Assembly: GCA_038087875.1 (NCBI GenBank)
Contig: CM075985.1
Span: 25,234,001-25,298,000, forward strand
Direction: 5' to 3'
Origin: Malacoraja senta
Taxonomy: Eukaryota
Length of the DNA stretch: 64,000 nucleotides
Each line of letters begins with the position of its first letter. Position 1 is the first letter of the stretch. This document shows, one piece after another, positions 14,101 through 64,000 of this stretch. The translations under genes and the position numbers were made by a program. The notes beneath the pieces were generated by a model. The model made no database searches and was not told where the DNA came from. It saw nothing but the letters and a program-made list of their open reading frames with translations.

Positions 14101-17100
14101 GTTATTATTAATTTAGGGTAGTGAGGGAAGGGTTTTGTGGGGAAGGGGTGAAGTTGACGGAGAGTGGAAAATACAATTCATGGGGTTTTAGAGGCAGACA
14201 AATCTTTAATTCATGCCAAAGCAGGCTTCATAGTTCCATTGAAGCTTGCATCTGCTGGTGTGAACTCTTGGGATACATCTCAGAAGCATGGATGAAAATT
14301 GAAGGAAATCCACAGAAATGTATTCAAAATGGTTTTTTTTAAGAAGAATTTGGTCATGTAGTGCAAATGACCATGGTGTTTTGTTGAATAATTTTTAGTC
14401 AAATGTGTTAACCCACCCAGCACCCAATCATTGTTCAGAATGATTTTCATGTTGTTCAATTAATTTTATACAAAGAATTATGAAAAGAACAAATCAATAT
14501 TGCAATGTGAATGTACATCATGATACATGGAACCAGCTACAGTATAATTTGTACAAACCTCATCACAGGTTGAATTATAAAAGCATGTTAATTTTTTCTC
14601 TATCACCGTGCCTCCTGAACATCTGTAGTAATTACATGTATTATTGGGATCAGACCATTCATCACCATCCTGAAAAACAAAAGCAGAAATATCAGCGATT
14701 GTCAACCTGAGTAGCGAAGAGCTCTCTCAAAGATGTTATGTGGGTTGTGGTTGTAAATATTCATGTGGTAAACACAGCTCCACTGATTGCCAAGGAAGCC
14801 AACCTCAGCTGAAGTATTAATAAAATCAGTACAATTATTTGCTGTGGGTTGCAGTGGCAAAATCAGCTACGTTTTTCTGTTCCAAATAATAAGTGTGGAT
14901 GTCAGACACAAAATTGATAACTCTGTTGTAATTCTCCACATCTTGTAACCATCCTTGTCAAACTTCAGATATGAATCTTGGTCTTTATCAGAAGATGCTG
15001 CAGGATAGGTACTGGATTTAAATTAATGCCCCTACATAAATGAAAGTATTGTGACTTTCATAACTGCAAATAAAATTGGAAAATATATTTGGAAAAAATT
15101 GTGAGAAATTCATTAAAGTTTGGGATTTCAGCTGAAAAGAGATATTATGCTTTATAAAATCAGTTCATGTTTGAAAGTAATCATTGGCTACGCATAGAAT
15201 AAGCTATAACATATCTTACTTAGAGTATGCTTTCTTTGCCCAACTGTGGAACAAAAATTAATATCGTTCCTTATTTAATTTTGATTGGAATTGAACAAGG
15301 TAACAAAGGGGTGTATTGGAGTTGACAATTGGAAATCTCTCATGACCAGGTGTTGAAGAAAATCCATGGGAAACAGCAAAGTAGATTAGATGCTTTTACC
15401 TCCTGTCTGGGAATGTGATGAATTGTGAATGGTAAATGTAAATAAGAAATAGAAGAAGATAATGAAGTTTGTTTAACTTTCTCTCAGAAGTTACTGTAGA
15501 TCACGCGCCCCCTATCGCTGGTAGCGTAGATACGTTGCAGTAGATGGGAGGCTTACGATTGGCTTGGAATAATGTCACGAGGCCTTTGTATTGTGTCTGA
15601 ATTGTATTAATCATTTGTTGTTGAATAAGATTAACATAAGCGAACCGTATGCAATGACTAATTAAATCATTGGTACCCATGTAGTAGATAGTATATTTTC
15701 GTATCTAAAAAGTAAACAAAAGCTGTTTACTGCACAGTATAACTGTCAGCTAATTCTGCTGTGAAGTCAGGGAATTGGTGAGCAGTTTTCTGCTGCCATC
15801 TCTCCATGATATCATGTAATAAAGTCTCTTGACACAAACCTGCAAAGTCTGTTACTTTTGGTTTTTCTTTAATTTCCCTCTAAATTAATTTCTTCCACAC
15901 CAAATGTTCAGCAATACTTCCAGGAGAGTTCTTAAGGAAGTGATTATACTTAATTTACAAACCAAGTCATTCGCCCTCAGAACTCCTCTGCAGCCAGGTC
16001 TGGATCTGCCTCTCTGTATATATCCACAATGTTGCCCTTCCGTCACAGATTGTACAATAATAATTGGTAAAGCAAATCCTGGTTGATTTATGAAGAGCAA
16101 TTTATTCAGAAATTTAATCATGGGTTTTCTCGTGCAGTGAAATTCCGTGGTTCAACCTACGCTGAAGGGATTCACACAATTTCAATTGTGGTTGGACAGA
16201 TTGACACTGAAGTGAAATCTGAAGCAACAGCATCAAGCAAATTTAGAAGATTATTCAGTGAAAACAGATACTGTACATCATGCGAGGATCATCTACATAA
16301 CCATCTGGAAAATGAAAGCCGTTTTGTGACTGATGCTAAATATAGGATTCTAAAAGCAAGAGATACAAAATGTAATTGGATATGGTGCAGAGTTTTGCGA
16401 TAATGCCAATGACACAGGCCCCTTGATTTAAAGGAGTGCAGAAGAGAGAGATCCTGTGCATCTAAGGACATCACGTGAGAGGGTGCTCCATGGGTTAAAG
16501 GGGAGACATAATGGCAAATAAAATTACAATCAGTAGATTTATAGTGTAAGCTGCAGAAGACAACAATCTGCCAATACAAGGTAGCATCAGAATGGTGGTT
16601 CACCCCTTGTTTTTTTTGGGAAAGGTTCACGGATCCAGACTAGATCTCAGATCAGCAAGTGAGAGGTAAAGGAAAGGCTGGAATGATGGGGGGGATCGGT
16701 GGAACTGAGAGGGAAACAATTAAGTTAAGAGAAAGGAAGCTGAGAGGAAGGAGTTCTCCCTGTTACATCCTACCTCTGGGATTGCTGCCCTTTCCCAGGA
16801 ACTACCACTGCATCCATACCATTTCTAGCCTGCTGCTCAGGGAAAGTCACTTCATAACAGTTGATGGTTTTACTACGGGCTTGAGAGAAATAGGGGCCGT
16901 GGGGAGTACTTGGTTAGTGGAGATAGAGGCAGAGAATTCTGAAGGATAGAGATAAGGATAGACGAGCAAAGAAAGGAAGAACGTCAAGTGAGAGGCTGTA
17001 GAGGTTGGGGGGATGGAGTGTGAAGGATGGGAGGAGATAGTTTGGAAGAAGGGGAAGAAGTGAAGGTCAATAGATCCACAAGCAAAACATGAACTACTAG

Positions 17101-20100
17101 AGGAACTCAGTGGGTCAGGCAGCATCTGTGGAGACAAAGGGGTGGTCAACTTGACATTTGCTCCTTTTTTTCGAGAAGAGATCCAGCCACCGGACCAAAG
17201 CGAAGGTGAAGGTGGAAACATAGGGCAAAGGCTTCTGTACATAAACATGTGTATATTGAGTGCATATGTCTTGACAGGCACCTGGATCTTGTCCACACAA
17301 ATGTTTGTCTTAACATTCATGTATCAGGCTTGGTCCCTGTCACTTTGTACCCCCTCCTCCTACCACTGTATCAAAACATTACTCTGTAAGTCCACATGGT
17401 TGCCTGGGATGTATTGGCTATCCCAAGTTAAAATAAGTCACAGATTGACAACTTCCATCCCTCAAGATGATGTTGAGGACCTGGACATTCCCAACAGATA
17501 CAGAACTGGAATACACTTTGCTATCATTGTCCAAGCATTCAGAAACCTGGTACTGGCATCACTGCTCTGCGGGTAGTAGGTACATCACCATAGTCACAGC
17601 CATATAGCATGGAAACAGACCCTTCAACCCAACTGGTCAATGCCAAACAAGATGCTCATCCTGCGCCCAGCAGGTAAATATTTCCCTAAAGCTTTCCTAT
17701 CCATGTACATGTTCAGATGTCTTTTTAATGATGCCATCATACCTGCCTTAGGAACTTCATCTGGCAGCTTTTTCCACCTACCCACTATCCACTCTGTGTT
17801 TCCTCTTAGCTTCATGCACTACATGTGCTAGACTGCCCAACATTTCTCTATTCCAATCATGTACCCAATTAACTAGTTCTCTAATGTTGCAGAGCAGCCT
17901 ACCATGTGGAATAGACTATGTCGATGGCCCTGTCATCATCAAAGTTTTTGGTTACTTCTTCCAAAACCTCAATCAAATTTTTGACACAATTTCCCACACA
18001 CAAAACCACGCTGACTATCCTGAGTCAACCCCACTCTTTCCTAATGCTTGTATATCTTATTCTTCAGAATCGTCTCCAGTAACTTTCCTACCACATATGT
18101 TAAGTTATAGGTCTATTGTTCTCATGTTTTCTATGTAATCCTTCTTCATTAGAGGCAAAATATTATCTACCCTCCAATCTTCCAGCACCCTACCTGTGCC
18201 ATAAGAAACGATTCATATATCTCAGTAAGGACTGCTGCAATTTCTTCCCATAATCTTCATGGATAAACCTGATCAAGCCCAGAGATTTATGTACCTTTTG
18301 GATCAGTACGCTGGAAAATGAATACTGTTTTAATAGGTTAAGCTATGTTATCAAGAATGAGCTTGTCTGTTGGCTCGTGAACTTCTCCTCTGAAACAATC
18401 CTTTGGTAACGTTTGTTTGGCAAGTGAGTAGCATAAACTAACTCCGACTCCTCCTCCTGACAAAATACCTGCAGCACAGAGTTGCCATTACCATGTTTTG
18501 ACAAGAGCCAAACACAAGACCTCATTGCAATATACCTGATCCAGATACTAACACCTATTAGATTAGATAATCATATGCATGAGAGACCACAAGAACGTCT
18601 GCATAACCGTCATTGAGTTCCAATTCAATGAGTGATTTTCAGAGATAATTTTAACGCCTGAGAATCCAGAACCTTCAAAAAGCCAGTTGAACATCATGAG
18701 CCAAATTAGCATTTTGTGCAGAAGAACTCAAAGTTATGTGACATAATTATAATAGTGCAATTTTACTAAATGACTATGTGACACCAGAGTTCATTATTGT
18801 GCATTTAAAAGTTTACTCTGAACTCCAGGTAATAAATCTAGAAAACAATCTAAAATTCAAGATGAGTTTCGACTATCATAATATAAGAACTCCGTAACCT
18901 CATGAGGTTTTGCCCTGATATTTGACCACACAAAATAATTTTACTTAAAGTAAAAGTATCAGAAAATACAAAATAATTTTCATGCACTCACATTTCTGAA
19001 GTTTCCTGAGTAGTCTGTGCATTCTGTAGGAAAGAGAGATGTGGAATGACTAAATTTGTGTTACCTTTTTGAGTTGTAGGAGGGCTTTATCTGAATTATA
19101 GTTTATAATTGTTTTACTGTTTTGTGGAAATATAACATACTAGTACATAAAGGAACACATTGTGTCGCATCAAAGAAAAGAATGCTATGTTCAACCAAGC
19201 AGCCAAGAGGAATTCGTACGCAGTTAGGAAACCTCCAACAGGAATTGATCAGCTGTCACATTTTAATAAATTGTTTTACTGTTGACATTTCCTTCATCGT
19301 AGAATCATGTGGGAGGGTATGCTTGCTGCTACATTTCTTCATTTCTGTCAATCTACAAATGACTATTTTGCTGCCATCTCGAACAATCCTCGAACAAGAG
19401 TGGTACTCTTGACACTTCGATTGTGGATTTCATGAAGAATTTACAAGGCGCTTCTTATTTCAGAAGTTGTTCTCCTATTTTCCGACTGAGAATTATTAAA
19501 TATTTGCGGTAACACCATAAACAGGCAAGAGGGAAATATAGAGCTTCACTTTAACGTTACCTACCATATGTAGTGCTGGTAGTGGGCTCAGTTGATGATG
19601 TTGTTGGCGTTGTTTCTTGAGGAAGAAGATAAAGTTTTATCAACCAATGTAGCTGAGAAGAATTAGTATGAAGTTGAAAAAGCTTCAAAAGGAAATGTTT
19701 AAGCTGGGAAATTGCGTCAGAATGTTTTACCCTGTTATTTTCTTAATTGCAGAATAAAGTTGCAGGGCCTACTAAATTTATACCTCACTCTCTCCTTGTC
19801 AATTCAGCAGCTGAATATTTCAGTGCCATCACAAATAATTACGCTCTCTTTCATAGCAGCACGAATATGTTTTTCAGAAATTGCAGCTGATCAGGCATTT
19901 AGTAAGATTGAGTTGGCACAGTTATGCAGCTGGTAGAGCTTCAGCCTCATAGTGTTAGAGATTTGTATTCTATCTTGACCTTGGGTGCTGTCTATGCTGG
20001 GATTGCACGATCTCCCTTTCACTGCCTGTGCTCCCTCCAAGTTTTTAACAGTGGATTATACTAACCTGGAGTAGTGATGGTGGTGGTCCCAGATGTTGAT

Positions 20101-23100
20101 GTAGTTGTTTCTAGTGAAATAAAAGAATGTTATGTTCATCCAAGAGAGCCAAGGAATTGTTATGCAGTTAAGAAACCTTCAACAGGAATTCATCAACTGG
20201 CACCTTTTAATAAAACATTTTACACTTGACATTTCCTTCATTGTAGAAAAAAGTGGGAGGACATAGTATGCTGCTAAATTTCTTTAACTCTGTCAAATAG
20301 CATATTAATATTTCCATGACATCTCGATCAATCCTGCACTCTTGACTCATCGATTGCGGATATCCCTGCGTATAGAAACGCGTCTTCCATACACTGTATG
20401 GTCTTCTTTATGCCATTATTACTAACAGTATAGTTGGATGATTCATGCCCCTAATGTAAGCGAAGATAAAAGAATGGAGCCACAGAGCTGATGTTAGAAA
20501 TGTTGATCCATTGTCTAAAGATTTGCCAATGTTTATTGAAAGTGGTTTGAACTATTTTGAAATTGTGTCGTAATTTGGTATAATTGTTATGAACCAAACA
20601 TTGATATCTTAACATGTATATTTGCACCAATTTATGCCAAAAATGTCAGCAAAGATGCAAGATGGAAGTCACAGAGCTGATGTTAGAAATGTTGTCTCAA
20701 TGTCTTCAATTTGCCAATGTTTATTGAAAGTGGTTTGTCTCACCTGTTGTGGAACTGGAGGTGGACTCAGTTGTACCAGTTGTTGAAGATGTTGTTGGTG
20801 TTGTTCCTGGAGAGCAAATAGAAAAGCATTTACAAATTGAATTGCAAGAGTCACCAATCAATTTCAGTACGATACTGCACATTTTCCTGAGACTGGGCTG
20901 AATTTTAACAATGTTCATTGCTCGTGCCAAACCAAAGGACATTTAGCAGTTAACCAAAATTTTGCTTCGTCATTTATCATGGACCGAAATTATGACAAGA
21001 CATTGTGATTTTTCAAAGAAAGTTCTGAACTCATTTATTGATCCATTTTGGAAAAATCATTGAGCAGAAACAAAACTGTTTAACTGCGTTGCCATGACCA
21101 AAAACTCCCGGAAAAGTGGAAGAGGCGAAGGGAAGAGACCTTTTCTAAAAAAAGTGAAAATCCTTATCCATGTCAACTGAAAAGTGCCAGCCTCAATGCT
21201 GTTTTTAAAATTATTGCAGGCAACCAGCACCAAAAGGCCTCCTTAATTTGATAGTTGCTTCTATATTTTCATGGTGAGATACTACATTTTGAAATAAAGC
21301 AATGAACAAATGTTCATGAAGAGGGTGCTATATAGAGCTTCACTAAACAAAGCACAGTCCTAAAGGAAAAGCTAACAAGATTGATAGTTGATGTTACTAA
21401 CCTGATGAAGTGCTGGTGGTGGTCTCAGTTGTTGGTGTCGTTTCTAGTGAAAGAAAAGATTGCTGTATTCAAGTGGGGCAGCCAAGAGGAATTGGTACAC
21501 AGTTATAAAGCCATCAACAGGAATTCATGAGCTGGCAGATTTTATGAAATTGTTTTAATATGTAGATTGGTGACTTCTTACTAATATAAGCGAAGATAAA
21601 CTGCTCAGCAACAACAGACTGTGTCCCCCGCGGCCTCTCCACGGCGTTCAGCGCCCAGCTCGCCTATTTCACCACCTCCACTCGGTGGGTCTCCGGTGCC
21701 GTCCCCGGTCACTTCCCCGTCACTTCACCAGTGAATTGAATGAAGCATGCGGTCATACTATACGGCTGCATTACTTTTTCCTTGTACATCAGCAGCTGAA
21801 TATTTCAGGGCCATCATAAACAATTTCAAACTCTTAATGTACCAACTTCAGATTTTTTGCAAACTCAGCATTCAGCACCAAAAAGGCCTCCTTAATTCAG
21901 TAGTTGTTTCTATATTTTCATGGTGAGAAACAACATTTTTGGAATAAAGGAATGAACAAATATTCCTGAAGAGGGTGCTATATAGAGCTTCACTAAACAA
22001 AGCACAGTCCTAAAGGAAAAGCTAACAAGATTGATAGATGATGTTACTAACCTGATGTAATGCTGGTGGTGGTCTCAGTTGTTGGTGTCGTTTCTAGTGA
22101 AAGAAAAGAATGCTGTATTCAAGTGGGGCAGCCAAGAGGAATTGGTACGCAGTTATAAAGCCATCAACAGGAATTAATGAGCAGGCATATTTTATGAAAA
22201 CGTTTTACTAGTTGTCACTTTCTTCATCAGTGAATAAAGCATGCGGCCATACTATACGGCTGCATTACTTTTTCCTTGTCTTTCAGAAATTGCAGCTGAT
22301 CAGGCATTTAGTAAGATTGAGTTGGCACAGATGTGCAGCTGGTAGAGCTGCAGCCTCATAGTGTTAGGGATTTGTATTCTATCCTGACCTCGGGTGCTGT
22401 CTATGCTGGGATTGCACGTTCTCCATTTCACTGCCTGTGATCCCCCCCAAGTTTTTAACAGAGGATGATACTGACCTGATGTAGTGGTGGTCCCAGATGT
22501 TGATGTAGTTGTTTCTAGTGAAATTTAAAAAATGTTATGTTCCACTGAGACAAACAAGAGGAATTGTTATGCAGTTTAGAATCCTTCAACAGGAATTTAT
22601 CAACTGGCACCTTTTAATAAAACATTTTACACTTGATATTTCCTTATCAGTGAATAAAGCGTGCGGCCATACTATGCGGCTGCATTACTACTTCCTTGTC
22701 AATCAGCAGCTGAATATGTCAGGGCCATCACAAACAATTTCAATTTCTTAATGTACCAACTTCAGATTTTGTGGAAGCTCAGCAAGTATTCCAAGAACTA
22801 CTGATCAGAAATTTAGAACATAAGGAGCGGTAAAGTGCCACAGCTGGTGCAACTCCTACCTCACAGCACCAGAGACTTCAGATTGATTTGTCCCGTGGGT
22901 GTTGTGTTCATGGAGATTACATGTACTCCCTGTTAGGTGTCCCTTTCCTACAAGTGTCTTAAATATATTGTCACTAACCTGATGTAGTACTGGTAGTGGT
23001 CTCAGTTGTTGATGTAGTTGTTGGTGTTTCTAGTGAAAGAAAATAATGCAATATTCAACCAAGGCAGCCAAGAGGAATTGGTATACAGCTAACTATTGGT

Positions 23101-26100
23101 AGTCAGGAAACCATCAGTAGGAATTCATATGCTGGCACACTTTATTAAAATGTTTAACAGATGGCATTTTTGTTCTTCATAGAATAAAATTGTAGGGCAA
23201 AATATACTTTTGATCAATCAGCAGCTGAATATTTCTGTGCCATCACAAATAATCCTGTGCTATCTATACACCAGTTGCGGACTTCCTGGAAGATCAACCG
23301 TCTTCCAAAGACCGCAAGGTCTACTTAATACCATAATTTCTAATAGTATGGAATGTGTGTACTATGGGTAAGCATGTCTGTTCATATGTCCCATTGATAC
23401 ATGATTCTCAACTTGCATAAAATGTGTTCATATTAATCATGGTTTTGTTTTTTGCTACGGAATGTCCGAAGAAATAGAGAAGCAGAAAACACCAACACAT
23501 ATCCTCCACAAATCTGAACTATTTTGAAATTGTGTCATAATTTGGTACAATTGTTATGAGCCAAACATTGACATCTTAACGTGTATATTTGCACAATTTA
23601 TGCCAATAATGTCAGCAAAGATGCAAGAAGTAAGTCACAGAGCTGATGTTAGAAATGTTGTTTCATTGTCTTTGATTTGCCAATGTTTATGGAAAGTGGT
23701 TTGACTCACCTGTTGTGGAACTGGAGGTGGACTCAGTTGTACCAGTTGTCAAAGATGTTGTTGGTGTTGTTCCTTGAGAGCAAATAGAAAAGCATTTACA
23801 AATTGAATTGCAAGAGTCACCAATCAATTTCAGTACGATACTGCACATTTTCCTGAGACTGGGCTGAATTTTAACAATGTTCATTGTTCGTGCCTAAGCA
23901 AAGGACATTTAGAAGTTAACCAAATTTTGCTTCGTCATTTATCAAGGACCGAAATTATGAAAAGACATTGTGATTTTTCAAAGAAAGTTCTGAACTCCTT
24001 TATTGATCCATTTTGGAAAAATCATTGAGCAGAAACAAAACTGTTTAACAGCGTTGCCATGACCAAAAACTCCCGGAATAGTGGAAGAGGCGAAGGGAAG
24101 AGACCTTTTCTATAAAAGTGAAAATCCTTATCCATGTCAACTGAAAAGTGCCAGCCTCAATGCTCTTTTTAAAATTATTTAGGCAACCAGCACCAAAACG
24201 CCACTTTAATATGGTACAGGCTTCTATATTTTCGTGGTGAGAAACTACATTTTTTTAATAATGGAATGAACAAATATTCCTGAAGAGGGTGCTGTGTAGA
24301 ACTTCACTAAACAAAGCACAGTCCCAAAGGAAAAGCTAACAAGATTGATAGATGATGTTACTAACCTGATGTAGTGCTGTTGGTGGTCTCAGTTGTTGGT
24401 GTCGTTTCTAGTGAAAGAAAGAATGCTGTATTCAAGTGGAGCAGCCAAGAGGAATTGGTACACAGTTATAAAGCCATCAACAGCAATTCATGAGCTGGCA
24501 CATTTTATGAAAGTGTTTTAATATGTAGATTTGTTACTTCTTCAGAATATATGCAAAGATAAACTGCTCAGCAACAACAGACTGTGTCCCCCGCGGCCTC
24601 TCCACGGCGTTCAGCGCCCAGCTCGCCTATTTCACCACCTCAACTCGGTGGATCTTCGGTGATGGCCCCGGTCACTTCCCCGGTCACTTCCCCGTCATTT
24701 CACCAGTGAATTGAATAAAGCATGCAGCCATACTATACGGCTGCATTACTTTTTCCTTGTCAATCAGCAGCTGAATATTTCAGGGCCATCATAAACAATT
24801 TCAATTTCTTAATGTACCAACTTCAGATTTTGTGGAAGCTCAGCAAGTATTCTAAGAACTACTGATCAGAAATTTAGAACATAAGGAGCGGTAAAGTGCC
24901 ACAGCTGGTGCAACTCCTACCTCACAGCACCAGAGAAGTCAGATTGATTTGTTCCACAGGTGTTGTGTGCATGGAGATTACATGTACTCCTGTTGTGTGT
25001 GCCTTTCCTACAAGTGTCAGAAATATATTGTCACTAACCTGATGTAGTACTGGTTGTGGTCTCAGTTGTTGATGTAGTTGTTGGTGTTTCTACTGAAAGA
25101 AAATAATGCAATATTCAACCAAGGCAGTCAAGAGGAATTGGTATACACCTAACCATTGGTAGTCAGGAAACCATCAGCAGGAATTCATATGCTGGCACAC
25201 TTTATTAAAATGTTTAACAGATGGCATTTTTGTTCTTCGTAGAATAAAATGGCAGGCCAAATTATATCTGATCAATCAGCAGCTGAATATTTCTGTGCCA
25301 TCACAAATAAACCTGTTCTCTCTATATACCAGTTGCAGATTTCCTGGAAGATCAACCGTCTTCCAAATACCGCAAGGTCTACTTAATACCATATTTTCTA
25401 ATACCATTATTCGTTGATCCATTTTTGAAAAATCTTTGAGCTGAAACAAAACTGTTTAACAGCGTTGCCATGACCAAAAACTCCCGGAATAGTGGATGAG
25501 GCGAAGGGAAGAGACCTTTTCTATAAAAGTGAAAATCCTTATCCATATCACTGTAAGGTGCCAGACTCAATTCACTTTTTAAATTATTATTGCAGGCAAT
25601 CAGCACCAAAAGGCCTCCTTAATTCGGTAGTTGTTTCTATATTTTCTTGGTGAGAAACTACATTTTTGGAATAAAGCAATGAACAAATAGTCCTGAAGAG
25701 GGTGCTATATAGAGCTTCACTAAACAAAGCACAGTCCTAAAGGAAAAGCTAACAAGATTGCTGGATGATGTTACTAACCTGATGTAATGCTGGTGGTGGT
25801 CTCTGTTGTTGGTGTCGTTTCTAGTGAGAAAAAAGAATGCTGTATTCAAGTGGGGCAGCCAAGAGGAATTGGTACGCAGTTATGAAGCCATCAACAGGAA
25901 TTCATGAGCTGGCATATTTTATGAAAACGTTTTACTAGTTGTCACTTTCTTCATCAGTCAATAAAGCATGCGGCCATACTATATGGCTGCATTGATTTTT
26001 CCTCGTCTTTCAGAAATTGCAGCTGATCAGGCATTTAGTAAGATTGAGTTGGCACAGATGTGCAGCTGGTAGAGCTGCAGCCTCATAGTGTTCGAGATTA

Positions 26101-29100
26101 GTATTCTATCCTGACCTTGGTTGCTGTCTATGCTGGGATTGCACGTTCTCCTTTTCACTGCCTGTGATCCCCCAAGTTTTTAACAGAGGATGATACTGAC
26201 CTGATGTTGTGGTGGTCCCAGATGTTGATGTAGTTGTTTCTAGTGAAATAAAAAAAATGTTATGTTCCACTGAGACAAACAAGAGGAATTGTTATGCAGT
26301 TTAGAATCCTTCAACAGGAATTTATCAACTGGCACCTTATAATAAAACATTTTACACTTGATATTTCCTTATCAGTGAATAAAGCGTGCAGCCATACAAT
26401 GCGGCTGCATTACTACTTCCTTGTCAATCAGCAGCTGAATATGTCAGGGCCATCACAAACAATTTCAATTTCTTAATGTACCAACTTCAGATTTTGTGGA
26501 AGCTCAGCAAGTATTCCAAGAACTACTGATCAGACATTTAGAACATAAGGAGCGGTAAAGTGCCACAGCTGGTGCAACTCCTACCTCACAGCACCAGAGA
26601 CTTCAGATTGATTTGTTCCATGGGTGTTGTATGCGTGGAGATTACATGTACTCCCTGTTATGTGTGCCTTTCCTACAAGTGTCAGAAATATATTGTCACT
26701 AACCTGATGTAGTACTGGTTGTGGTCTCAGTTGATGATGTAGTTGTTGGTGTTTCTAGTGAAAGAAAATAATGCAATATTCAACCAAGACAGCCAAGAGG
26801 AATTGGTACACAGCTAACTATTGGTAGTCAGGAAACCATCAGCAGGAATTCATATGCTGGCACACTTCATTAAAATGTTTAACAGATGGTATTTTTGTTC
26901 TTCATAGAATAAAATTGTAGGGCAAAACATACTTTTGATCAATCAGCAGCTGAATATTTCTTTGCCATCACAAATAATCCTGTGCTATCTATACACCAGT
27001 TGCGGATTTCCTGGAAGATCAACCGTCTTCCAAAGACCGCAAGGTCTACTTAATACCATAATTTCTAATAGTATGGAATGTGTGTACTATGGGTAAGCAT
27101 GTCTGTTCATATGTCCCATTGATACATGATTCTCAACTTGCATAAAATGTGTTCATATTAATCATGCTTTTGTTTTTTGCTATGGAATGTCCGAAGAAAT
27201 AGAGAAGCAGAAAACACCAACACATATCCTCCACAAATCTGAACTATTTTGAAATTGTGTCATAATTTGGTACAATTGTTATGAGCCAAACATTGACATC
27301 TTAACGTGTATATTTGCACAATTTATGCCAATAATGTAAGCAAAGATGCAAGAAGTAAGTCACAGAGCTGATGTTAGAAATGTTGTTTCATTGTCTTTAA
27401 TTTGCCAATGTTTATGGAAAGTGGTTTCACTCACCTGTTGTGGAACTGGAGGTGGACTCAGTTGTACCAGTTGTCAAAGATGTTGTTGGTGTTGTTCCTT
27501 GAGAGCAAATAGAAAAGCATTTACAAATTGAATTGCAAGAGTCACCAATCAATTTCAGTACGATACTGCACATTTTCCTGAGACTGGGCTGAATTTTAAC
27601 AATGTTCATTGTTCGTGCCTAAGCAAAGGTCATTTAGAAGTTAACCAAATTTTGCTTCGTCATTTATCAAGGACCGAAATTATGAAAAGACATTGTGATT
27701 TTTCAAAGAAAGTTCTGAACTCCTTTATTGATCCATTTTGGAAAAATCATTGAGCAGAAACAAAACTGTTTAACAGCGTTGCCATGACCAAAAACTCCCG
27801 GAATAGTGGAAGAGGCGAAGGGAAGAGACCTTTTCTATAAAAGTGAAAATCCTTATCCATGTCAACTGAAAAGTGCCAGCCTCAATGCTCTTTTTTAAAT
27901 TATTTAGGCAACCAGCACCAAAAGGCCACCTTAATATGGTAGAGGCTTCTATATTTTCGTGGTGAGAAACTACATTTTTTTAATAAAGGAATGAACAAAT
28001 ATTCCTGAAGAGGGTGCTGTGTAGAACTTCACTAAACAAAGCACAGTCCTAAAGGAAAAGCTAACAAGATTGATAGATGATGTTACTAACCTGATGTAGT
28101 GCTGGTGGTGGTCTCAGTTGTTGGTGTCGTTTCTAGTGAAAGAAAGAATGCTGTATTCAAGTGGAGCAGCCAAGAGGAATTGGTACACAGTTATAAAGCC
28201 ATCAACAGCAATTCATGAACTGGCACATTTTATGAAAGTGTTTTAATATGTAGATTGGTTACTTCTTAAGAATATATGCAAAGATAAACTGCTCAGCAAC
28301 AACAGACTGTGTCCCCCGCGGCCTCTCCACGGCGTTCAGCGCCCAGCTCGCCTATTTCACCACCTCAACTCGGTGGGTCTCCGGTGATGGCCCCGGTCAC
28401 TTCCCCGGTCACTTCCCCGTCATTTCACCAGTGAATTGAATAAAGCATGCTGTAGTGCGTGGGTCTCGGAATTAAGCACGAAGTCGTGTTTTGAGAAGCA
28501 CTTTTTATTAATATCCTCCCAGTTCTAGGGAAGACCAAACGAGAGGAAGATGGCACCCAAAACCCCTGCCTTTAAAGCCTCCGGCTAAGGGCCGCCTCCG
28601 GACTGAACCTCTCCTGTGCCGAGGGGTTCGACACTATGATGGCACGACCCTTGGGAGCCGCCACAGAACCCCCCCCCAAGAACCAGAGGCACGAAACGCA
28701 CCGGCGGGCGAACGACCCGGCCGGCCCGCGTGCGGAAGTTAGCCGCTAGTGGGGCTTGCGGAGGTATAGGTGGAGGGACAGGACGAGGGACCGGCGGTAG
28801 GACAGGTGGAGTGACAGGCGGAGGGAGCCGTGAAGGGGGGCGCCCTCGAGGCCGAGGTTGGGCAACCAGCACCGGCTGGTCAATGTCCAGGTGTGCCGGC
28901 TTCAAACGGTCAATCGACACTGCCTCCGGCCGGCCCCCCATGTCCAGGACAAAAGTCGACTGCCCGTGTTCCAGCACTCGGAACGGGCCCTCGTACGGCC
29001 TCTGGAGTGGCGTCCGGTGGGCATCACGGCGCAGGAAGATGTACGGGCAGTCCCTGAGGGCTGATGGCACGTGTGGGTGAAATGTCCCATGGCGGGACGT

Positions 29101-32100
29101 CGGGACGGGTGCGAGCCTGCCAACTTGCTCGCGAAGGCGCTTTAGGGTGGATGAGGGCGTTCCCTGCTGCCCCGGCGCCGACGGCACGAACTCCCCGGGC
29201 ACCGTGAGTGGCGACCCGTAAACGAGCTCCGCCGATGATGAGGCCAAGTCCTCTTTGGGAGCGGTCCGGATGCCCAGCATCACCCACGGCAACTCGTCCA
29301 TCCAGTCTGGGCCGGAGAGTCGTGCCTTCAGTGCTGCCTTCAGCTGCCGGTGGAATCTCTCCACCAGACCGTTAGCTTGCGGGTGGTAAGCCGTGGTGTG
29401 GTGTAGCCGCACCCCCAGCAAGTGAGCCATGGCTGACCACAGCTCGGAGGTGAACTGTGGCCCCCGGTCTGAGGAGATGTGCGCTGGCACCCCGAAGCGA
29501 GCAATCCAATGCGCGGACAACGCACGAGCACACGTAACCGTTGAAGTATCAGTCAACGGAATGGCCTCCGGCCACCGCGTGAAGCGGTCCACCATTGTCA
29601 GAAGGTGGGTGATGCCCCGGGATGGCGGGAGAGTGCCTACAATGTCTATGTGGAGATGGTCGAACCGCCGGTGAGGTAGACCAAACTCCTGGAGAGGCGC
29701 ACGGACATGGCGCTGGATCTTTGCCGTCTGGCACGGAATGCAGGTGCGAGCCCAATGGCCAACCTGCTTGCGCAGACCGTGCCACATGAAACGAGCGGCC
29801 ACTAGTGCCGTTGTCACCCGGATTGATGGGTGAGACAGTCCGTGGATCACCTCGAACACCCTCCGGCGCCAGGTGGCAGGGACGATGGGGCGCGGCTGAC
29901 CGGACGCCATACAATGCGGCTGCATTACTTTTTCCTTGTCAATCAGCAGCTGAATATTTCAGGGCCATCATAAACAATTTCAATTTCTTAATGTACCAAC
30001 TTCAGATTTTGTGGAAGCTCAGCAAGTATTCTAAGAACTACTGATCAGAAATTTAGAACATAAGGAGCGGTAAAGTGCCACAGCTGGTGCAACTCCTACC
30101 TCACAGCACCAGAGAATTCAGATTGATTTGTTCCACAGGTGTTGTGTGCATGGAGATTACATGTACTCCTGTTGTGTGTGCCTTTCCTACAAGTGTCAGA
30201 AATATATTGTCACTAACCTGATGTAGTACTGGTAGTGGTCTCAGTTGTTGATGTAGTTGTTGGTGTTTCTACTGAAAGAAAAGAATGCAATATTCAACCA
30301 AGGCAGCCAAGAGGAATTGGTATACACCTAACTATTGGTAGTCAGGAAACCATCAGCAGGAATTCATATGCTGGCACACTTTATTAAAATGTTTAACAGA
30401 TGGCATTTTTGTTCTTCGTAGAATAAAATGGCAGGCCAAATTATATCTGATCAATCAGCAGCTGAATATTTCTGTGCCATCACAAATAAACCTGTTCTCT
30501 CCATATACCAGTTGCAGATTTCCTGGAAGATCAACCGTCTTCCAAATACCGCAAGGTCTACTTAATACCATATTTTCTAATACCATTATTCGTTGATCCA
30601 TTTTTGAAAAATCTTTGAGCTGAAACAAAACTGTTTAACAGCGTTGGCATGACCAAAAACTCCCGGAATAGTGGAAGAGGCGAAGGGAAGAGACCTTTTC
30701 TATAAAAGTGAAAATCCTTATCCATATCTACTGTAAGGTGCCAGACTCAATTCACTTTTTAAATTATTATTGCAGGCAATCAGCACCAAAAGGCCTCCTT
30801 AATTCGATAGTTGTTTCTATATTTTCTTGGTGAGAAACTACATTTTTGGAATAAAGCAATGAACAAATATTCCTGAAGAGGGTGCTATATAGAGCTTCAC
30901 TAAACAAAGCACAGTCCTAAAGGAAAAGCTAACAAGATTGATAGATGATGTTACTAACCTGATGTAATGCTGGTGGTGGTCTCTGTTGTTGGTGTCGTTT
31001 CTAGTGAAAAAAAAGAATGCTGTATTCAAGTGGGGCAGCCAAGAGGAATTGGTACGCAGTTATAAAGCCATCAACAGGAATTCATGAGCTGGCATATTTT
31101 ATGAAAACGTTTTACTAGTTGTCACTTTCTTCATCAGTCAATAAAGCATGCGGCCATACTATATGGCTGCATTGATTTTTCCTCGTCTTTCAGAAATTGC
31201 AGCTGATCAGGCATTTAGTAAGATTGAGTTGGCACAGATGTGCAGCTGGTAGAGCTGCAGCCTCATAGTGTTAGAGATTTGTATTCTATCCTGACCTCGG
31301 TTGCTGTCTATGCTGGGATTGCACGTTCTCCTTTTCACTGCCTGTGATGCCCCAAGTTTTTAACAGAGGAATATACTGACCTGATGTTGTGGTGGTCCCA
31401 GATGTTGATGTAGTTGTTTCTAGTGAAATAAAAAAATGTTATGTTCCACTGAGACAAACAAGAGGAATTGTTATGCAGTTTAGAATCCTTCAACAGGAAT
31501 TTATCAACTGGCACCTTTTAATAAAACATTTATACACTTGATATTTCCTTATCAGTGAATAAAGCGTGCGGCCATACAATGCGGCTGCATTACTTTTTCC
31601 TTGTCAATCAGCAGCTGAATATGTCAGGGCCATCACAAACAATTTCAATTTCTTAATGTACCAACTTCAGATTTTGTGGAAGCTCAGCAAATATTCCAAG
31701 AACTACTGATCAGAAATTTAGAACATAAGCAGCGGTAAAGTGCCACAGCTGGTGCAACACCTACGTCACAGCACCAGAGACTTCAGATTGATTTGTTCCA
31801 TGGGTGTTGTGTGCATGGAGATTACATGTACTCCCTGTTATGTGTGTATTTCCTACAAGTGTCCGAAATATATTGTCACTAACCTGATGTAGTACTGGTC
31901 GTGGTCTCAGTTGATGATGTAGTTGTTGGTGTTTCTAGTGAAAGAAAATAATGCAATATTCAACCAAGACAGCCAAGAGGAATTGGTATACAGCTAACTA
32001 TTGGTAGTCAGGAAACCATCAGCAGGAATTCTATGCTGGCACACTTTATTAAAATATTTAACAGATGGCATTTTTGGTCTTCATAGAATAAAATTGTTGG

Positions 32101-35100
32101 GCAAAACATACTTTTGATCAATCAGCAGCTGAATATTTCTGTGCCATCACAAATAATCCTGTGCTATCTATACACCAGTTGCGGATTTCCTGGAAGATCA
32201 ATCGTCTTCCAAAGACCGCAAGGTCTACTTAATACCATAATTTCTAATAGTATGGAATGTGTGTACTATGGGTAAGCATGTCTGTTCATATGTCCCATTG
32301 ATACATGATTCTCAACTTGCATAAAATGTGTTCATATTAATCATGGTTTTGTTTTTTGCTACGGAATGTCCGAAGAAATAGAGAAGCAGAAAACACCAAC
32401 ACATATCCTCCACAAATCTGAACTATTTTGAAATTGTGTCATAATTTGGTACAATTGTTATGAGCCAAACATTGACATCTTAACGTGTATATTTGCACAA
32501 TTTATGCCAATAATGTAAGCAAAGATGCAAGAAGTAAGTCACAGAGCTGATGTTAGAAATGTTGTTTCATTGTCTTTGATTTGCCAATGTTTATGGAAAG
32601 TGGTTTCACTCACCTGTTGTGGAACTGGAGGTGGACTCAGTTGTACCAGTTGTCAAAGATGTTGTTGGTGTTGTTCCTTGAGAGCAAATAGAAAAGCATT
32701 TACAAATTGAATTGCAAGAGTCACCAATCAATTTTAGTACGATACTGCACATTTTCCTGAGACTGGGCTGAATTTTAACAATGTTCATTGTTCGTGCCTA
32801 AGCAAAGGACATTTAGAAGTTAACCAAATTTTGCTTCGTCATTTATCAAGGACCGAAATGATGAAAAGACATTGTGATTTTTCAAAGAAAGTTCTGAACT
32901 CCTTTATTGATCCATTTTGGAAAAATCATTGAGCAGAAACAAAACTGTTTAACAGCGTTGCCATGACCAAAAACTCCCGGAATAGTGGAAGAGGCAAAGG
33001 GAAGAGACCTTTTCTATAAAAGTGAAAATCCTTATCCATGTCAACTGAAAAGTGCCAGCCTCAATGCTCTTTTTAAAATTATTTAGGCAACCTGCACCAA
33101 AACGCCACTTTAATATGGTAGAGGCTTCTATATTTTCGTGGTGAGAAACTACATTTTTTGAATAAAGGAATGAACAAATATTCCTGAAGAGGGTGCTGAG
33201 TAGAACTTCACTAAACAAAGCACAGTCCTAAAGGAAAAGCTAACAAGATTGATAGATGATGTTACTAACCTGATGTGGTGCTGGTGGTGGTCTCAGTTGT
33301 TGGTGTCGTTTCTAGTGAAAAAAAAGAATGCTGTATTCAAGTGGGGCAGCCAAGAGGAATTGGTACGCAGTTATAAAGCCATCAACAGCAATTCATGAGC
33401 TGGCACATTTTATGAAAGTGTTTTAATATGTAGATTGGTTACTTCTTAATAATATATGCAAAGATAAACTGCTCAGCAACAACAGACTGTGTCCCCCGCG
33501 GCCTCTCCACGGCGTTCAGCGCCCAGCTCGCCTATTTCACCACCTCAACTCGGTGGGTCTCCGGTGATGGCCCCGGTCACTTCCCCGGTCACTTCCCTGT
33601 CATTTCACCAGTGAATTGAATAAAGCATGTGGCCATACTATATGGCTGCATTACTTTTTCCTTGTCAATCAGCAGCTGAATATTTCAGGGCCATCATAAA
33701 CAATTTCAATTTCTTAATGTACCAACTTCAGATTTTGTGGAAGCTCAGCAAGTATTCTAAGAACTACTGATCAGAAATTTAGAACATAAGGAGCGGTAAA
33801 GTGCCACAGCTGGTGCAACTCCTACCTCACAGCACCAGAGAATTCAGATTGATTTGTTCCACAGGTGTTGTGTGCATGGAGATTACATGTACTCCTGTTG
33901 TGTGTGCCTTTCCTACAAGTGTCTGAAATATATTGTCACTAACCTGATGTAGTACTGGTTGTGGTCTCAGTTGTTGATGTAGTTGTTGGTGTTTCTACTG
34001 AAAGAAAATAATGCAATATTCAACCAAGGCAGCCAAGAGGAATTGGTATACACCTAACCATTGGTAGTCAGGAAACCATCAGCAGGAATTCATATGCTGG
34101 CACACTTTATTAACATGTTTAACAGATGGCATTTTTGTTCTTCGTAGAATAAAATGGCAGGCCAAATTATATCTGATCAATCAGCAGCTGAATATTTCTG
34201 TGCCATCACAAATAAACCTGTTCTCTCTATATACCAGTTGCAGATTTCCTGGAAGATCAACCGTCTTCCAAATACCGCAAGGTCTACTTGATACCATATT
34301 TTCTAATACCATTATTCGTTGATCCATTTTTGAAAAATCTTTGAGCTGAAACAAAACTGTTTAACAGCGTTGCCATGACCAAAAACTCCCGGAATAGTGG
34401 AAGAGGCGAAGGGAAGAGACCTTTTCTATAAAAGTGAAAATCCTTATCCATATCTACTGTAAGGTGCCAGACTCAATTCACTTTTTAAATTATTATTGCA
34501 GGCAATCAGCACCAAAAGGCCTCCTTAATTCGGTAGTTGTTTCTATATTTTCTTGGTGAGAAACTACATTTTTGGAATAAAGCAATGAACAAATTTTCCT
34601 GAAGAGGGTGCTATATAGAGCTTCACTAAACAAAGCACAGTCCTAAAGGAAAAGCTAACAAGATTGATAGATGATGTTACTAACCTGATGTAATGCTGGT
34701 GGTGGTCTCTGTTGTTGGTGTCGTTTCTAGTGAAAAAAAAGAATGCTGTATTCAAGTGGGGCAGCCAAGAGGAATTGGTACGCAGTTATAAAGCCATCAA
34801 CAGGAATTCATGAGCTGGCATATTTTATGAAAACGTTTTACTAGTTGTCACTTTCTTCATCAGTCAATAAAGCATGCGGCCATACTATATGACTGCATTG
34901 ATTTTTCCTCGTCTTTCAGAAATTGCAGCTGATCAGGCATTTAGTAAGATTGAGTTGGCACAGATGTGCAGCCGGTAGAGCTGCAGCCTCATAGTGTTAG
35001 AGATTAGTATTCTATCCTGACCTCGGTTTCTGTCTATGCTGGGATTGCACGTTCTCCTTTTCACTGCCTGTGATCCCCCAAGTTTTTAACAGAGGATGAT

Positions 35101-38100
35101 ACTGACCTGATGTTGTGGTGGTCCCAGATGTTGATGTAGTTGTTTCTAGTGAAATAAAAAAAATGTTATGTTCCACTGAGACAAACAAGAGGAATTGTTA
35201 TGCAGTTTAGAATCCTTCAACAGGAATTTATCAACTGGCACCTTTTAATAAAACATTTTACACTTGATATTTCCTTATCAGTGAATAAAGCGTGCGGCCA
35301 TACTATGCGGCTGCATTACTACTTCCTTGTCAATCAGCAGCTGTATATGTCAGGGCCATCACAAACAATTTCAATTTCTTAATGTACCAACTTCAGATTT
35401 TGTGGAAGCTCAGCAAGTATTCCAAGAACTACTGATCAGAAATTTAGAACATAAGGAGCGGTAAAGTGCCACAGCTGGTGCAACTCCTACCTCACAGCAC
35501 CAGAGACTTCAGATTGATGTGTTCCATGGGTGTTGTGTTCATGGAGATTACATGTACTCCCTGTTATGTGTCCCTTTCCTACAAGTGTCTTAAATATATT
35601 GTCACTAACCTGATGTAGTACTGGTAGTGGTCTCAGTTGTTGATGTAGTTGTTGGTGTTTCTAGTGAAAGAAAATAATGCAATATTCAACCAAGACAGCC
35701 AAGAGAAATTGGTATACAGCTAACTATTGGTAGTCAGGAAACCATCAGTAGGAATTCATATGCTGGCACACTTTATTAAAATGTTTAACAGATGGCATTT
35801 TTGTTCTTCATAGAATAAAATTGTAGGGCAAAATATACTTTTGATCAATCAGCAGCTGAATATTTCTGTGCCATCACAAATAATCCTGTTCTATCTGTCA
35901 CCAGTTGCAGATTTCCTGGAAGATAAACCGTCTTCCAAAGACCGCAAGGTCTACTTAATACCATAATTTCTAATAGTATGGAATGTGTGTACTATGGGTA
36001 AGCATGTCTGTTCATATGTCCCATTGATACATGATTCTCAACTTGCATAAAATGTGTTCATATTAATCATGGTTTTGTAGTTTGCTACGGAATGTCCGAA
36101 GAAATTGAGAAGCAGAAAACACCAACTCACATCCTCCACAAATCTGAACTATTTTGAAATTGTGCCATAATTTGGTAAAACTGTTATGTCAAACATTGAC
36201 AGCTTAACATGTATATTTGCACAATTTATGCCAATAATGTAAGCAAAGATGCAAGAAGTTAGCCACAGAGCTGATGTTAGAAATGTGTTTCATTGTCTTT
36301 GATTTGCCAATGTTTATGGAAAGTGGTTTGACTCACCTGTTGTGGAACTGGAGGTGGACTCAGTTGTACCAGTTGTCAAAGATGTTGTTGGTGTTGTTCC
36401 TTGAGAGCAAATAGAAAAGCATTTACAAATTGAATTGCAAGAGTCACCAATCAATTTCAGTACGATACTGCACATTTTCCTGAGACTGGGCTGAATTTTA
36501 ACAATGTTCATTGTTCGTGCCTAAGCAAAGGACATTTAGAAGTTAACCAAATTTTGCTTCGTCATTTATCAAGGACCGAAATTATGAAAAGACATTGTGA
36601 TTTTTCAAAGAAAGTTCTGAACTCCTTTATTGATCCATTTTGGAAAAATCATTGAGCAGAAACAAAACTGTTTAACTGCGTTGCCATGACCAAAAACTCC
36701 CGGAAAATTGGAAGAGGCAAAGGGAAGAGACCTTTTCTAAAAAAGTGAAAATCCTTATCCATGTCAACTGAAAAGTGCCAGCCTCAATGCTGTTTTTAAA
36801 ATTATTGTAGGCAGCCAGCATCTAAAGGCCTCCTTAATTTGGTAGTAGCTTCTATATTTTCGTGTTGACAAACTACATTTTTGAATAAAGCAATGAACAA
36901 ATGTTCCTGAAGAGGGTGCTATATAGAGCTTCACTAAACAAAGCACAGTCCTAAAGGAAAAGCTAACAAGATTGATAGATGATGTTACTAACCTGATGTA
37001 GTGCTGGTGGTGGTCTCAGTTGTTGGTGTCGTTTCTAGTGAAAGAAAATATTGCTGTATTCAAGTGGGACAGTCAAGAGGAATTGGTACACAGTTATAAA
37101 GCCATCAACAGGAATTCATGAGCTGGCACATTTTATGAAAGTGTTTTAATATATAGATTGGTTACTTCTTACTAATATAAGCGAAGATAAACTGCTCAGC
37201 AACAACAGACTGTGTCCCCCGCGGCCTCTCCACTGTGTTCAGCGCCCAGCTCGCCTATTTCACCACCTCAACTCGGTGGGTCTCCGGTGCTGTCCCCGGT
37301 CACTTCCCCGTCACTTCACCGGTGAATTGAATAAAGCATGCGGCCATACTATACGGCTGCATTACTTTTTCCTTGTCAATCAGCAGCTGAATATTTCAGG
37401 GCCATCATAAACAATTTCAATTTCTTAATGTACCAACTTCAGATTTTGTGGAAGCTCAGCAAGTATTCTAAGAACTACTGATCAGAAATTTAGAACATAA
37501 GGAGCGGTAAAGTGCCACAGCTGGTGCAACTCCTACCTCGCAGCACCAGAGAATTCAGATTGATTTGTTCCACAGGTGTTGTGTGCATGGAGGTTACATG
37601 TACTCCTGTTGTGTGTGCCTTTCCTACAAGTGTCTGAAATATATTGTCACTAACCTGATGTAGTACTGGTTGTGGTCTCAGTTGTTGATGTAGTTGTTGG
37701 TGTTTCTACTGAAAGAAAATAATGCAATATTCAACCAAGGCAGCCAAGAGGAATTGGTATACACCTAACTATTGGTAGTCAGGAAACCATCAGCAGGAAT
37801 TCATATGCTGGCACACTTTATTGAAATGTTTAACAGATGGCATTTTTGTTCTTCGTAGAATAAAATGGCAGGCCAAATTATATCTGATCAATCAGCAGCT
37901 GAATATTTCTGTGCCATCACAAATAAACCTGTTCTCTCTATATACCAGTTGCAGATTTCCTGGAAGATCAACCGTCTTCCAAATACTGCAAGGTCTACTT
38001 AATACCATATTTTCTAATACCATTATTCGTTGATCCATTTTTGAAAAATCTTTGAGCTGAAACAAAACTGTTTAACAGCGTTGCCATGACCAAAAACTCC

Positions 38101-63858: not shown

Positions 63859-64000
63859 CTTGAGAGCAAATAGAAAAGCATTTACAAATTGAATTGCAAG
63901 AGTCACCAATCAATTTCAGTACGATACTGCACATTTTCCTGAGACTGGGCTGAATTTTAACAATGTTCATTGTTCGTGCCTAAGCAAAGGACATTTAGAA

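What the first reader, a model, noticed from the sequence alone, without database searches (positions are those of the whole stretch)
23710..27434. The unit of coding expansion is a 3.72-kb exon-plus-intron block encoding a 96-aa acidic repeat
Seen: each unit gives D(21)-A(17)-B(13)-C(14)-A'(17)-C'(14) = 96 aa, about 76 Thr/Ser, 10 Glu, 5 Pro, and no Lys, Arg or Cys. Introns are about as conserved between units as exons. Inference: a protein-level VNTR is being run as a genomic macrosatellite under concerted evolution, so copy number probably varies between individuals in steps of 96 aa per 3.7 kb.
Basis: partly seen in the sequence, partly recalled or inferred. Interest (0 to 1): 0.7.

Follow-up and report, generated by a model that had tools for sequence, protein, structure and literature searches.

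The report
Skate mucin core: micro-exon macrosatellite
The 3.7-kb repeat is real: each copy carries six tiny spliced exons that add about 96 sugar-carrying residues to a giant skate mucus protein, and the copies are kept alike within the species, but the design is already known from other mucins.

Summary
Observation confirmed. On the minus strand, 23710-27434 is one 3,725-bp unit. It has six phase-1/phase-1 exons of 51, 39, 42, 51, 42 and 63 nt, 288 nt or 96 aa in all: T56 S19 E10 P5 G3, no K, R or C. At least 11 full units run from about 19.6 kb to the window end.

New here:
- Contigs of two runs of a sister species (labelled 'RNA? (probably DNA)' by the tool, but behaving as RNA here) cover the exons, skip the unique introns, and join exons at the predicted GT..AG borders.
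- A little-skate RefSeq model strings the same exons onto a VWC and cystine-knot tail.
- Units differ by 2-3% within this genome. Sister-species units differ by about 7%, with differences fixed across all copies, which is the signature of concerted evolution.
- Exons are about half as variable as introns, not equally variable.
- The repeat is nested: exon plus flank, then a ~1.4-kb half-unit, then the 3.72-kb unit. The newest event is a ~16-kb near-identical block at a 20.03-kb (five-unit) offset, tagged by a retrotransposon fragment.
- Not every unit gives 96 aa.

Copy-number variation between individuals could not be tested.

This scan has already reported the same array further on and paralogous arrays elsewhere in this genome. 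It is a new member of a known kind.

The parts
19565..64000 (-). Micro-exon PTS array of a gel-forming mucin gene: 68 candidate exons, running off the window's high end
   Evidence: period 3.72 kb; D exons at 20744, 23710, 27435, 32614, 36337, 40050, 43744, 47467, 52646, 56362, 60073, 63796
23710..27434 (-). The unit of the finding (U1): 3,725 bp, six exons, six introns of 380-689 bp, 7.7% coding
26704..26754 (-). exon A, 51 nt, phase 1-1
   Evidence: the A->B and D->A joints are seen in RNA-like contigs on the equivalent exons of U2
26201..26239 (-). exon B, 39 nt, phase 1-1; identical in 10 of the 11 units (U0 has one synonymous change)
25779..25820 (-). exon C, 42 nt, phase 1-1
25039..25089 (-). 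exon A', 51 nt, phase 1-1
24366..24407 (-). exon C', 42 nt, phase 1-1
23710..23772 (-). exon D, 63 nt, phase 1-1, GTGAGT donor
24003..25403 (-). Half-unit carrying A' and C'. It is an older duplicate of 25414-27070, which carries A, B and C; identity 91-94%
22692..38862 (.). Near-identical block: about 16.2 kb with 10 substitutions and 2 indels against its copy 20,03x bp further on (42.7-58.9 kb)
28453..29906 (-). 1,454-bp LTR-retrotransposon fragment (integrase zinc finger plus core; 446-aa open frame) in the A'->C' intron of unit U2
48485..49938 (-). Second copy of the same retrotransposon fragment in unit U7, 1454/1454 identical
38395..38436 (-). exon C of unit U4 with acceptor AG changed to GG; the exon body is intact
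58420..58461 (-). exon C of unit U9 with the same AG>GG acceptor change
7976..19616 (-). 3' end of the same gene. Last diverged PTS exon 19563-19616; VWC-like exons 18992-19021, 14556-14726 and 10114-10161; cystine-knot exons 9375-9482 and 7976-8140

Best explanation
This is the Pro/Thr/Ser-rich (PTS) core of a secreted, gel-forming mucin gene of a skate, read on the minus strand. The core is not one giant exon. It is written as hundreds of 39-63-nt exons, all in phase 1-1, so any number of them can be added, lost or skipped without breaking the frame.

Six such exons and their introns form a 3.72-kb unit of 96 aa: about 78% Thr and Ser as O-glycosylation sites, and 10% Glu, half of it made by the split codon at exon joints.

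The unit multiplies and is homogenised as a whole, introns included, by unequal exchange and gene conversion between misaligned copies. Units therefore stay 97-98.5% alike within the species while drifting about 7% from the sister species.

Shown here: the anatomy, splicing of the exons in a sister species, the C-terminal VWC/cystine-knot tail, within-species versus between-species similarity, the mosaic pattern, and a very recent five-unit-register duplication or conversion.

Inferred: heavy O-glycosylation, that array length sets the length of the mucin rod, and that copy number is polymorphic.
For: Anatomy.

Splicing: contigs of runs X21 and X23 (sister species B) have depth only in bins holding exons or transposon-like sequence. 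They have zero depth in the unique intron bins, which both DNA runs cover. Their joints are 28132>30218, 28132>31381 and 30268>32614, all with CT..AC ends (GT..AG on the minus strand), plus 31419>30218, 27498>28093 and 32675>28090. These are the junctions A'->C', B->C, D->A, A->B and C'->D. The DNA runs X1 and X3 show none of them.

Annotation: the best relative of the last exon among 1.84 billion representatives is RefSeq XP_055509561.1, 'integumentary mucin C.1-like', from Leucoraja erinacea. It chains the same D, A, B and C exon peptides to a VWC and cystine-knot tail. That tail maps exon by exon onto 19616-7976 of the window and matches the solved MUC2 C-terminus at E=5e-14.

Concerted evolution: unit contigs of species B carry 161 other letters in 2,304 aligned (about 7%) at collapsed depth 380-530. 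Full-depth differences sit at 30591, 30754 and 32566, with indels at 27904, 30167, 30764, 31619, 31912 and 32031. At all of these places the units of this genome agree with each other.

Exchange between units: 39% of informative site pairs fail the four-gamete test. Neighbouring sites fail in only 17%, below all 300 shuffles.

Recent multi-unit event.
Against: The runs that behave as RNA are from a sister species, and the tool itself labels them 'RNA? (probably DNA)'. Expression in this species is therefore inferred.

Short-read contigs collapse repeats and drop rare variants. 'Fixed' therefore means fixed in the majority path.

The C->A' joint was not among the rows shown. A/A' and C/C' are too alike for the aligner to tell apart.

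Recent independent re-amplification in each species would give the same within-versus-between pattern as ongoing conversion.

The N-terminal D domains lie outside the window.
Confidence: 0.85

Rival explanations
1. There is no ongoing concerted evolution. Each species re-amplified the array recently from one or a few founder units (birth and death), and the units have simply not had time to diverge.
For: Units are uniformly 97-98.5% alike with no clear gradient by distance. One very young multi-unit duplication is visible, so amplification does occur.
Against: A single burst predicts a star-like pattern with few conflicting sites. Observed instead: 39% of informative site pairs conflict, and compatible sites cluster locally. 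At 30726 and 30734 units U4 and U9 keep the sister-species letters while the other units share a derived state. That points to spread among pre-existing units. The two models are not exclusive.
Confidence: 0.25
2. The near-identical 16-kb block at the 20-kb offset is an assembly artefact: two haplotypes, or a mis-joined repeat, laid in tandem rather than a real duplication.
For: Identity of about 99.94% is in the range of allelic difference. The array is hard to assemble. The two retrotransposon copies are 1454/1454 identical. No read-level check was possible (one search gave contigs only).
Against: The block is flanked on both sides, in the same register, by sequence with ordinary between-unit divergence of 1.9-4.3%.
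Confidence: 0.15
3. The array is a combinatorial splicing cassette. Because all exons are phase 1-1, cells choose different subsets to tune mucin length, and intron conservation reflects splicing control.
For: All 68 exons are frame-symmetric. Lang et al. 2006 raised the same idea for chicken Muc13 (PMC1552070). The little-skate model strings exons in an order that differs from the genomic unit.
Against: No alternative joint could be told apart from mis-placement among near-identical exons. Introns are twice as variable as exons and consist partly of transposon fragments. No known RNA family lies in them. Whole-unit homogenisation explains the intron similarity without any selection.
Confidence: 0.1
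4. It is a non-coding satellite or a dead mucin pseudogene whose exon-like pieces are relics.
For: Only 7.7% of each unit is exon. Thr-rich low-complexity frames arise easily.
Against: 66 of 68 exons keep AG and GT and an open phase-1 frame. Spliced contigs join them at exactly those borders. The one indel seen inside an exon in the sister species is 3 nt (place 31912). Exons vary less than introns. A RefSeq model uses them.
Confidence: 0.03

Closest known systems
Chicken Muc13 and chicken MUC2 PTS domains encoded by multiple exons (Lang, Hansson & Samuelsson 2006, PMC1552070; Jiang et al. 2013, PMC3549977)
   Same: The PTS tandem repeats are spread over many small exons, with near-identical exons each encoding a repeat unit. 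Muc13 has at least 12 repeats of 20 aa, one per exon. The repetitive element of the chicken MUC2 PTS domain spans exons 32-45.
   Different: Here the repeating genomic block holds six different exons (96 aa) in 3.72 kb. The array is an order of magnitude larger, is nested, and belongs to a secreted mucin with a VWC/cystine-knot tail rather than a membrane mucin such as Muc13.
RefSeq model XP_055509561.1, 'integumentary mucin C.1-like', Leucoraja erinacea
   Same: It has the same D, A, B and C exon peptides and the same C-terminal exons, with 89% identity in the last exon. It is very probably the orthologue, so the exons are already annotated as coding in a sister skate.
   Different: The model is a 305-aa fragment. 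Its start maps into what is an intron here (about 20886-20918), and it shows nothing of the array's size or unit structure.
Mammalian mucin VNTRs (for example the 30-bp VNTR of human MUC19)
   Same: The length of the O-glycosylated rod is set by the copy number of a tandem coding repeat. In humans that copy number is polymorphic and moves in multi-repeat blocks; one variant adds four segments of 106 repeats (PMC10557577).
   Different: The human MUC19 VNTR lies inside one coding exon of about 12 kb. Here more than 92% of each repeat unit is intron.
Intragenic coding macrosatellites such as the LPA repeat, listed as an intragenic tandem repeat in Brahmachary et al. 2014 (PMC4063668)
   Same: Kilobase-scale tandem units that include whole exons, so unit number sets the number of protein modules (the details of LPA are from my own knowledge).
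   Different: Those units encode folded domains. This one encodes a disordered glycosylation scaffold in micro-exons. Polymorphism is documented there and untested here.

Membership tests
Gel-forming (VWF-related) secreted mucin | Long Pro/Thr/Ser-rich repetitive domain | tested here: met
   75 of 96 residues are Thr or Ser and 5 are Pro, with no Cys, Lys or Arg. At least 11 units lie in the window.
Gel-forming (VWF-related) secreted mucin | C-terminal cystine-knot (CTCK) dimerisation domain | tested here: met
   The two exon halves score 23.3 and 17.8 bits against Pfam Cys_knot (cut-off 24) when searched apart. The orthologous model P0001 scores 32.3 bits and matches the MUC2 C-terminus 7qcu at 5e-14 and the VWF CTCK 4nt5 at 9e-9. 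The joined window exons were not searched.
Gel-forming (VWF-related) secreted mucin | Three N-terminal VWD-C8-TIL assemblies | not testable with these tools
MUC19/MUC6-type architecture (no fourth D domain; definition from Lang et al. 2016) | No VWD-C8-TIL unit between the PTS domain and the VWC/CTCK tail | tested here: met
   The little-skate model goes straight from the last PTS exon to VWC and CTCK. Its exons map in order onto 19616-7976. No other Cys-rich open segment with a Pfam match lies between them. More distant relatives of the CTCK (P0002, P0003, P0004, P0008) do carry VWD or C8 domains, so this rests on one fragmentary model.
MUC19/MUC6-type architecture | Phylogenetic placement of the N-terminal D domains with Muc19 | not testable with these tools
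   The N-terminus is outside the window. The 'MUC19-type' label comes from earlier scan notes and was not checked here.
Multi-exon PTS domain (chicken Muc13 kind) | Repeat units of the PTS domain are each encoded by separate, near-identical, frame-compatible exons that are spliced together | tested here: met
   All exons are phase 1-1 with AG/GT borders. Spliced joints are seen in RNA-like contigs.
Coding macrosatellite / protein-level VNTR | Tandem kilobase units, each an integral number of codons | tested here: met
   3.69-3.73-kb units with 288 coding nt each.
Coding macrosatellite / protein-level VNTR | Copy number differs between individuals | not testable with these tools
   All runs on offer are kept as contigs, with no raw reads or long reads.
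Concerted evolution of a tandem array | Paralogous units within a species are more alike than units between species, with species-specific changes present in all copies | tested here: met
   2.3% within against about 7% between. Full-depth differences in species B fall at sites that are invariant among the 10-11 units here. Caveat: the contigs are collapsed.

The most novel reading that the evidence does not exclude
The array grows and shrinks in multi-unit jumps. The visible jump has a five-unit register: 20 kb, about 466 aa. Individuals of this skate would then carry mucins that differ by hundreds of residues. Units with a broken acceptor (U4, U9) or a shortened polypyrimidine tract (U8) would be silently skipped, so the genomic macrosatellite and splice-site decay together tune rod length. 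Homogenisation of whole units, introns included, would then be what keeps hundreds of micro-exons spliceable.
Probability: 0.3. Interest if true: 0.5.

Novelty: new member of a known kind. Interest (0 to 1): 0.3.

Why it matters
Mucin cores are among the hardest coding sequences to assemble and annotate. This locus shows cleanly how a vertebrate can build one from a macrosatellite of spliced micro-exons rather than from one giant exon. It also gives direct sequence evidence that such an array is homogenised within a species. For annotators, a '3.7-kb satellite' in cartilaginous-fish genomes can be about 200 real exons. For mucus biology, the locus offers a place where protein length variation could be read from array length with long reads. 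It does not reveal a new mechanism.

Tried and rejected
- Tandem Repeats Finder found nothing because the period exceeds its 500-bp limit; k-mer offsets were used instead.
- Rfam found no RNA family anywhere in the window, so conserved introns are not explained by snoRNA or miRNA hosts.
- There is no ORF of 80 aa or more in the unit on either strand; the longest is 76 aa.
- Pfam on single VWC-like exons gave nothing.
- Copy number from depth was rejected: all runs are contigs and the tool warns that depth is not copy number. The ratio of ~400-750 to ~20 between collapsed and minor contigs is only a hint of some tens of copies.
- A stable five-unit higher-order repeat was rejected. U5 against U10 (97.7%) and U0 against U5 (97.0%) are no closer than other pairs, so the 20-kb register reflects one recent event.
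- The retrotransposon fragment could not be used to date the event across species. Only the empty site is seen in species B, and the filled junction was not among the rows shown for either species.
- The joined (spliced) exon model was not searched.
- The Lang et al. 2007 paper is not held. Frog and shark precedents named in earlier scan notes were therefore not verified.
Full report
**What is there**

K-mer offsets show a dominant period of 3,72x bp, with secondary peaks at 5,179 and 20,032 bp. A binned dot plot puts the array from about 20.5 kb to the end of the window. Nothing repeated lies before 19.5 kb.

I scanned the minus strand for AG-exon-GT segments whose phase-1 reading is open and at least 60% Thr/Ser. 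The scan gives a strictly periodic set of exons. Inside 23710-27434 they are:
- A 26704-26754
- B 26201-26239
- C 25779-25820
- A' 25039-25089
- C' 24366-24407
- D 23710-23772

Their lengths are 51, 39, 42, 51, 42 and 63 nt, which is 288 nt. Every exon begins with two bases and ends with one base of a split codon. That codon is G|AA (Glu) at five joints and G|GA (Gly) before D. The unit encodes 96 residues: T56, S19, E10, P5, G3, and I, N and L once each, with no Lys, Arg or Cys. Introns are 380-689 bp, so only 7.7% of the unit is coding.

**Is it a gene?**

The exons have good acceptors (a pyrimidine run followed by cactag) and donors (gttagt, gtcagt, gtgagt).

I used the one reads call on unit U2 (27400-32700) with two runs that hold a small share of the gene's 3' end and two DNA runs. 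The first two runs are X21 and X23 from sister species B, guessed to be RNA. Their contigs have depth only in bins that hold exons or transposon-like sequence. They have none in the unique intron bins, which both DNA runs (X3 of species B, X1 of this species) cover.

Their joints fall on the predicted exon borders:
- 28132>30218, 28132>31381 and 30268>32614, all with CT..AC ends, which is GT..AG on the minus strand
- 31419>30218 (goes back), 27498>28093, and 32675>28090 (goes back)

In transcript order these are A'->C', B->C, D->A, A->B and C'->D. One contig in each run chains D-A-B-C. Neither DNA run shows any of these joints. The tool labels these runs 'RNA? (probably DNA)', but at this locus they behave as spliced RNA.

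Two limits apply. The evidence comes from a sister species. And A/A' and C/C' are too alike for the aligner to separate, so the C->A' joint was not seen among the rows shown.

**Which gene?**

The last exon (7976-8137) was searched against 1.84 billion representative proteins. The best hit, at 89% identity, is RefSeq XP_055509561.1, 'integumentary mucin C.1-like', from Leucoraja erinacea.

That 305-aa model strings the same D, A, B and C peptides and then a VWC-like segment and a cystine knot. tblastn maps its tail exon by exon onto the window: 19563-19616, 18992-19021, 14556-14726, 10114-10161, 9375-9482 and 7976-8140. The two knot exons hit Pfam Cys_knot just under threshold when searched singly. 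The model as a whole passes and matches the solved MUC2 C-terminus and the VWF CTCK.

So the array is the PTS core of a secreted, VWF-related mucin with no fourth D domain before the tail. That is the MUC19/MUC6 layout as defined by Lang et al. 2016. The N-terminus lies outside the window, so family placement beyond that was not tested. The joined spliced model was deliberately not searched; the exons were handled one at a time by reference.

**Structure of the repeat**

Eleven full units (U0-U10) were aligned. They are 97.2-98.5% identical, and U0 at the array's 3' edge is about 96-97% identical to the rest.

The unit is nested.
- Every exon with about 100 nt of flank resembles every other at 75-81% identity.
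- A ~1.4-kb half-unit carrying A'-C' (24003-25403) duplicates the half-unit carrying A-B-C (25414-27070) at 91-94%.
- The 3.72-kb unit repeats at about 98%.
- One block of about 16.2 kb (22.7-38.9 kb) recurs 20,03x bp further on with only 10 substitutions and 2 indels. The sequence on both sides, in the same register, shows ordinary 1.9-4.3% divergence.

That block carries a 1,454-bp fragment of an LTR retrotransposon. The fragment has Integrase_H2C2 and rve domains and a 446-aa open frame, and lies in the same sense as the gene. It sits in the A'->C' intron of U2 (28453-29906) and, letter for letter, in U7 (48485-49938). The other units, and the collapsed units of species B, have the empty site.

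U5 against U10 and U0 against U5 are no closer than other pairs. I therefore read this as one very recent five-unit-register duplication or long conversion, not as an established higher-order repeat. An assembly artefact cannot be excluded without reads.

**Not every unit is 96 aa**

U0 lacks A' and predicts 79 aa. In U4 and U9 the acceptor of exon C is GG instead of AG while the exon body is intact. If that exon is skipped, those units give 82 aa, and the frame is unaffected. In U8 the pyrimidine run before exon C is 7 nt shorter than in its twin U3.

**Exons versus introns**

Mean pairwise difference among non-redundant units is 1.1-1.5% in exons and 2.3-2.7% in introns. Variable columns are 8/288 against 216/3436, Fisher p=0.014. 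Introns are thus nearly, but not quite, as conserved as exons.

The high intron similarity is explained by whole-unit homogenisation. No Rfam family and no ORF of 80 aa or more lies in the introns, and parts of them are transposon fragments with very high genomic depth.

**Concerted evolution**

I could approach it through the DNA contigs of sister species B.

Its unit contigs lie on every bin at collapsed depth 380-530 and carry 161 other letters in 2,304 aligned, about 7% (table 8). Several differences are at full depth in B and absent from this species' contigs: 30591, 30754 and 32566, and indels at 27904, 30167, 30764, 31619, 31912 and 32031. At all of these places the 10-11 units of the window agree with each other. 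The indel at 31912 lies in exon A and is 3 nt long.

At 30726 and 30734, species B has the letters that here survive only in U4 and U9. This suggests an older state that has not yet been overwritten.

Among the units, 39% of informative site pairs fail the four-gamete test. Neighbouring sites fail in only 17%, below all 300 shuffles. That is a mosaic, as exchange between units would leave.

The six-exon layout predates the species split, because both the A->B and the A'->C' joints occur in species B RNA. Units are nonetheless far more alike within than between species. This supports concerted evolution. Recent re-amplification in each species is a partial alternative.

**What could not be done**

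- Copy number in different individuals: only contigs were available.

**Comparison with the literature**

- Chicken Muc13 has a PTS domain with one near-identical exon per repeat, and its authors already proposed length control by splicing (PMC1552070).
- The repetitive element of the chicken MUC2 PTS domain spans exons 32-45 (PMC3549977).
- The human MUC19 VNTR sits in one exon of about 12 kb and varies in large blocks (PMC10557577).
- Macrosatellites that contain exons are a recognised class (PMC4063668).

**Earlier scan notes and verdict**

This scan has already reported the continuation of this array and several paralogous micro-exon mucin arrays in the same genome.

The finding is real and well described. 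It now has splicing and cross-species support, but it is a further example of a known design.

Noticed in passing
window 28453-29906 and 48485-49938: LTR-retrotransposon fragment (integrase zinc finger plus core) with an uninterrupted 446-aa frame, in the same sense as the mucin gene. The two copies are 1454/1454 identical. There is no obvious target-site duplication. In empty units a single base stands at the site.
   Followed up: partly
window 38395-38436 and 58420-58461: Exon C of units U4 and U9 has its acceptor AG changed to GG while the 42-nt exon body is unchanged. This is probably a silently skipped exon.
   Followed up: partly
window 54759-54775 versus 34727-34745: Unit U8 has a 7-nt shorter pyrimidine run before exon C than its near-identical twin U3. 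It is one of only two indels in the 16-kb young block.
   Followed up: no
window 30726 and 30734 (columns shared by U4 and U9): Two sites where the minority letters of U4 and U9 equal the full-depth letters of the sister species. They are possibly ancestral states not yet homogenised.
   Followed up: partly
window 31117-31293 (equivalent to about 25930-26110 in U1) and 28285-28461 (equivalent to about 24586-24720): Intron segments with 10-20 times the depth of the rest of the unit in both DNA runs. They are a SINE-like element and a G+C-rich repeat fragment that were part of the unit before it multiplied.
   Followed up: no
window 11841-13156 (minus), 2716-3212 and 6325-6660 (plus): Reverse-transcriptase fragment (Pfam RVT_1) and two further ORFs that share its C-terminal motif. 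These are retroelement debris in and after the gene's last introns.
   Followed up: partly
window 11564-11706: A run of 143 N, left untouched.
   Followed up: no
window about 20886-20918: The first 11 residues of the little-skate RefSeq model XP_055509561.1 map into what is an intron here. That model is a truncated fragment of a much larger gene.
   Followed up: partly
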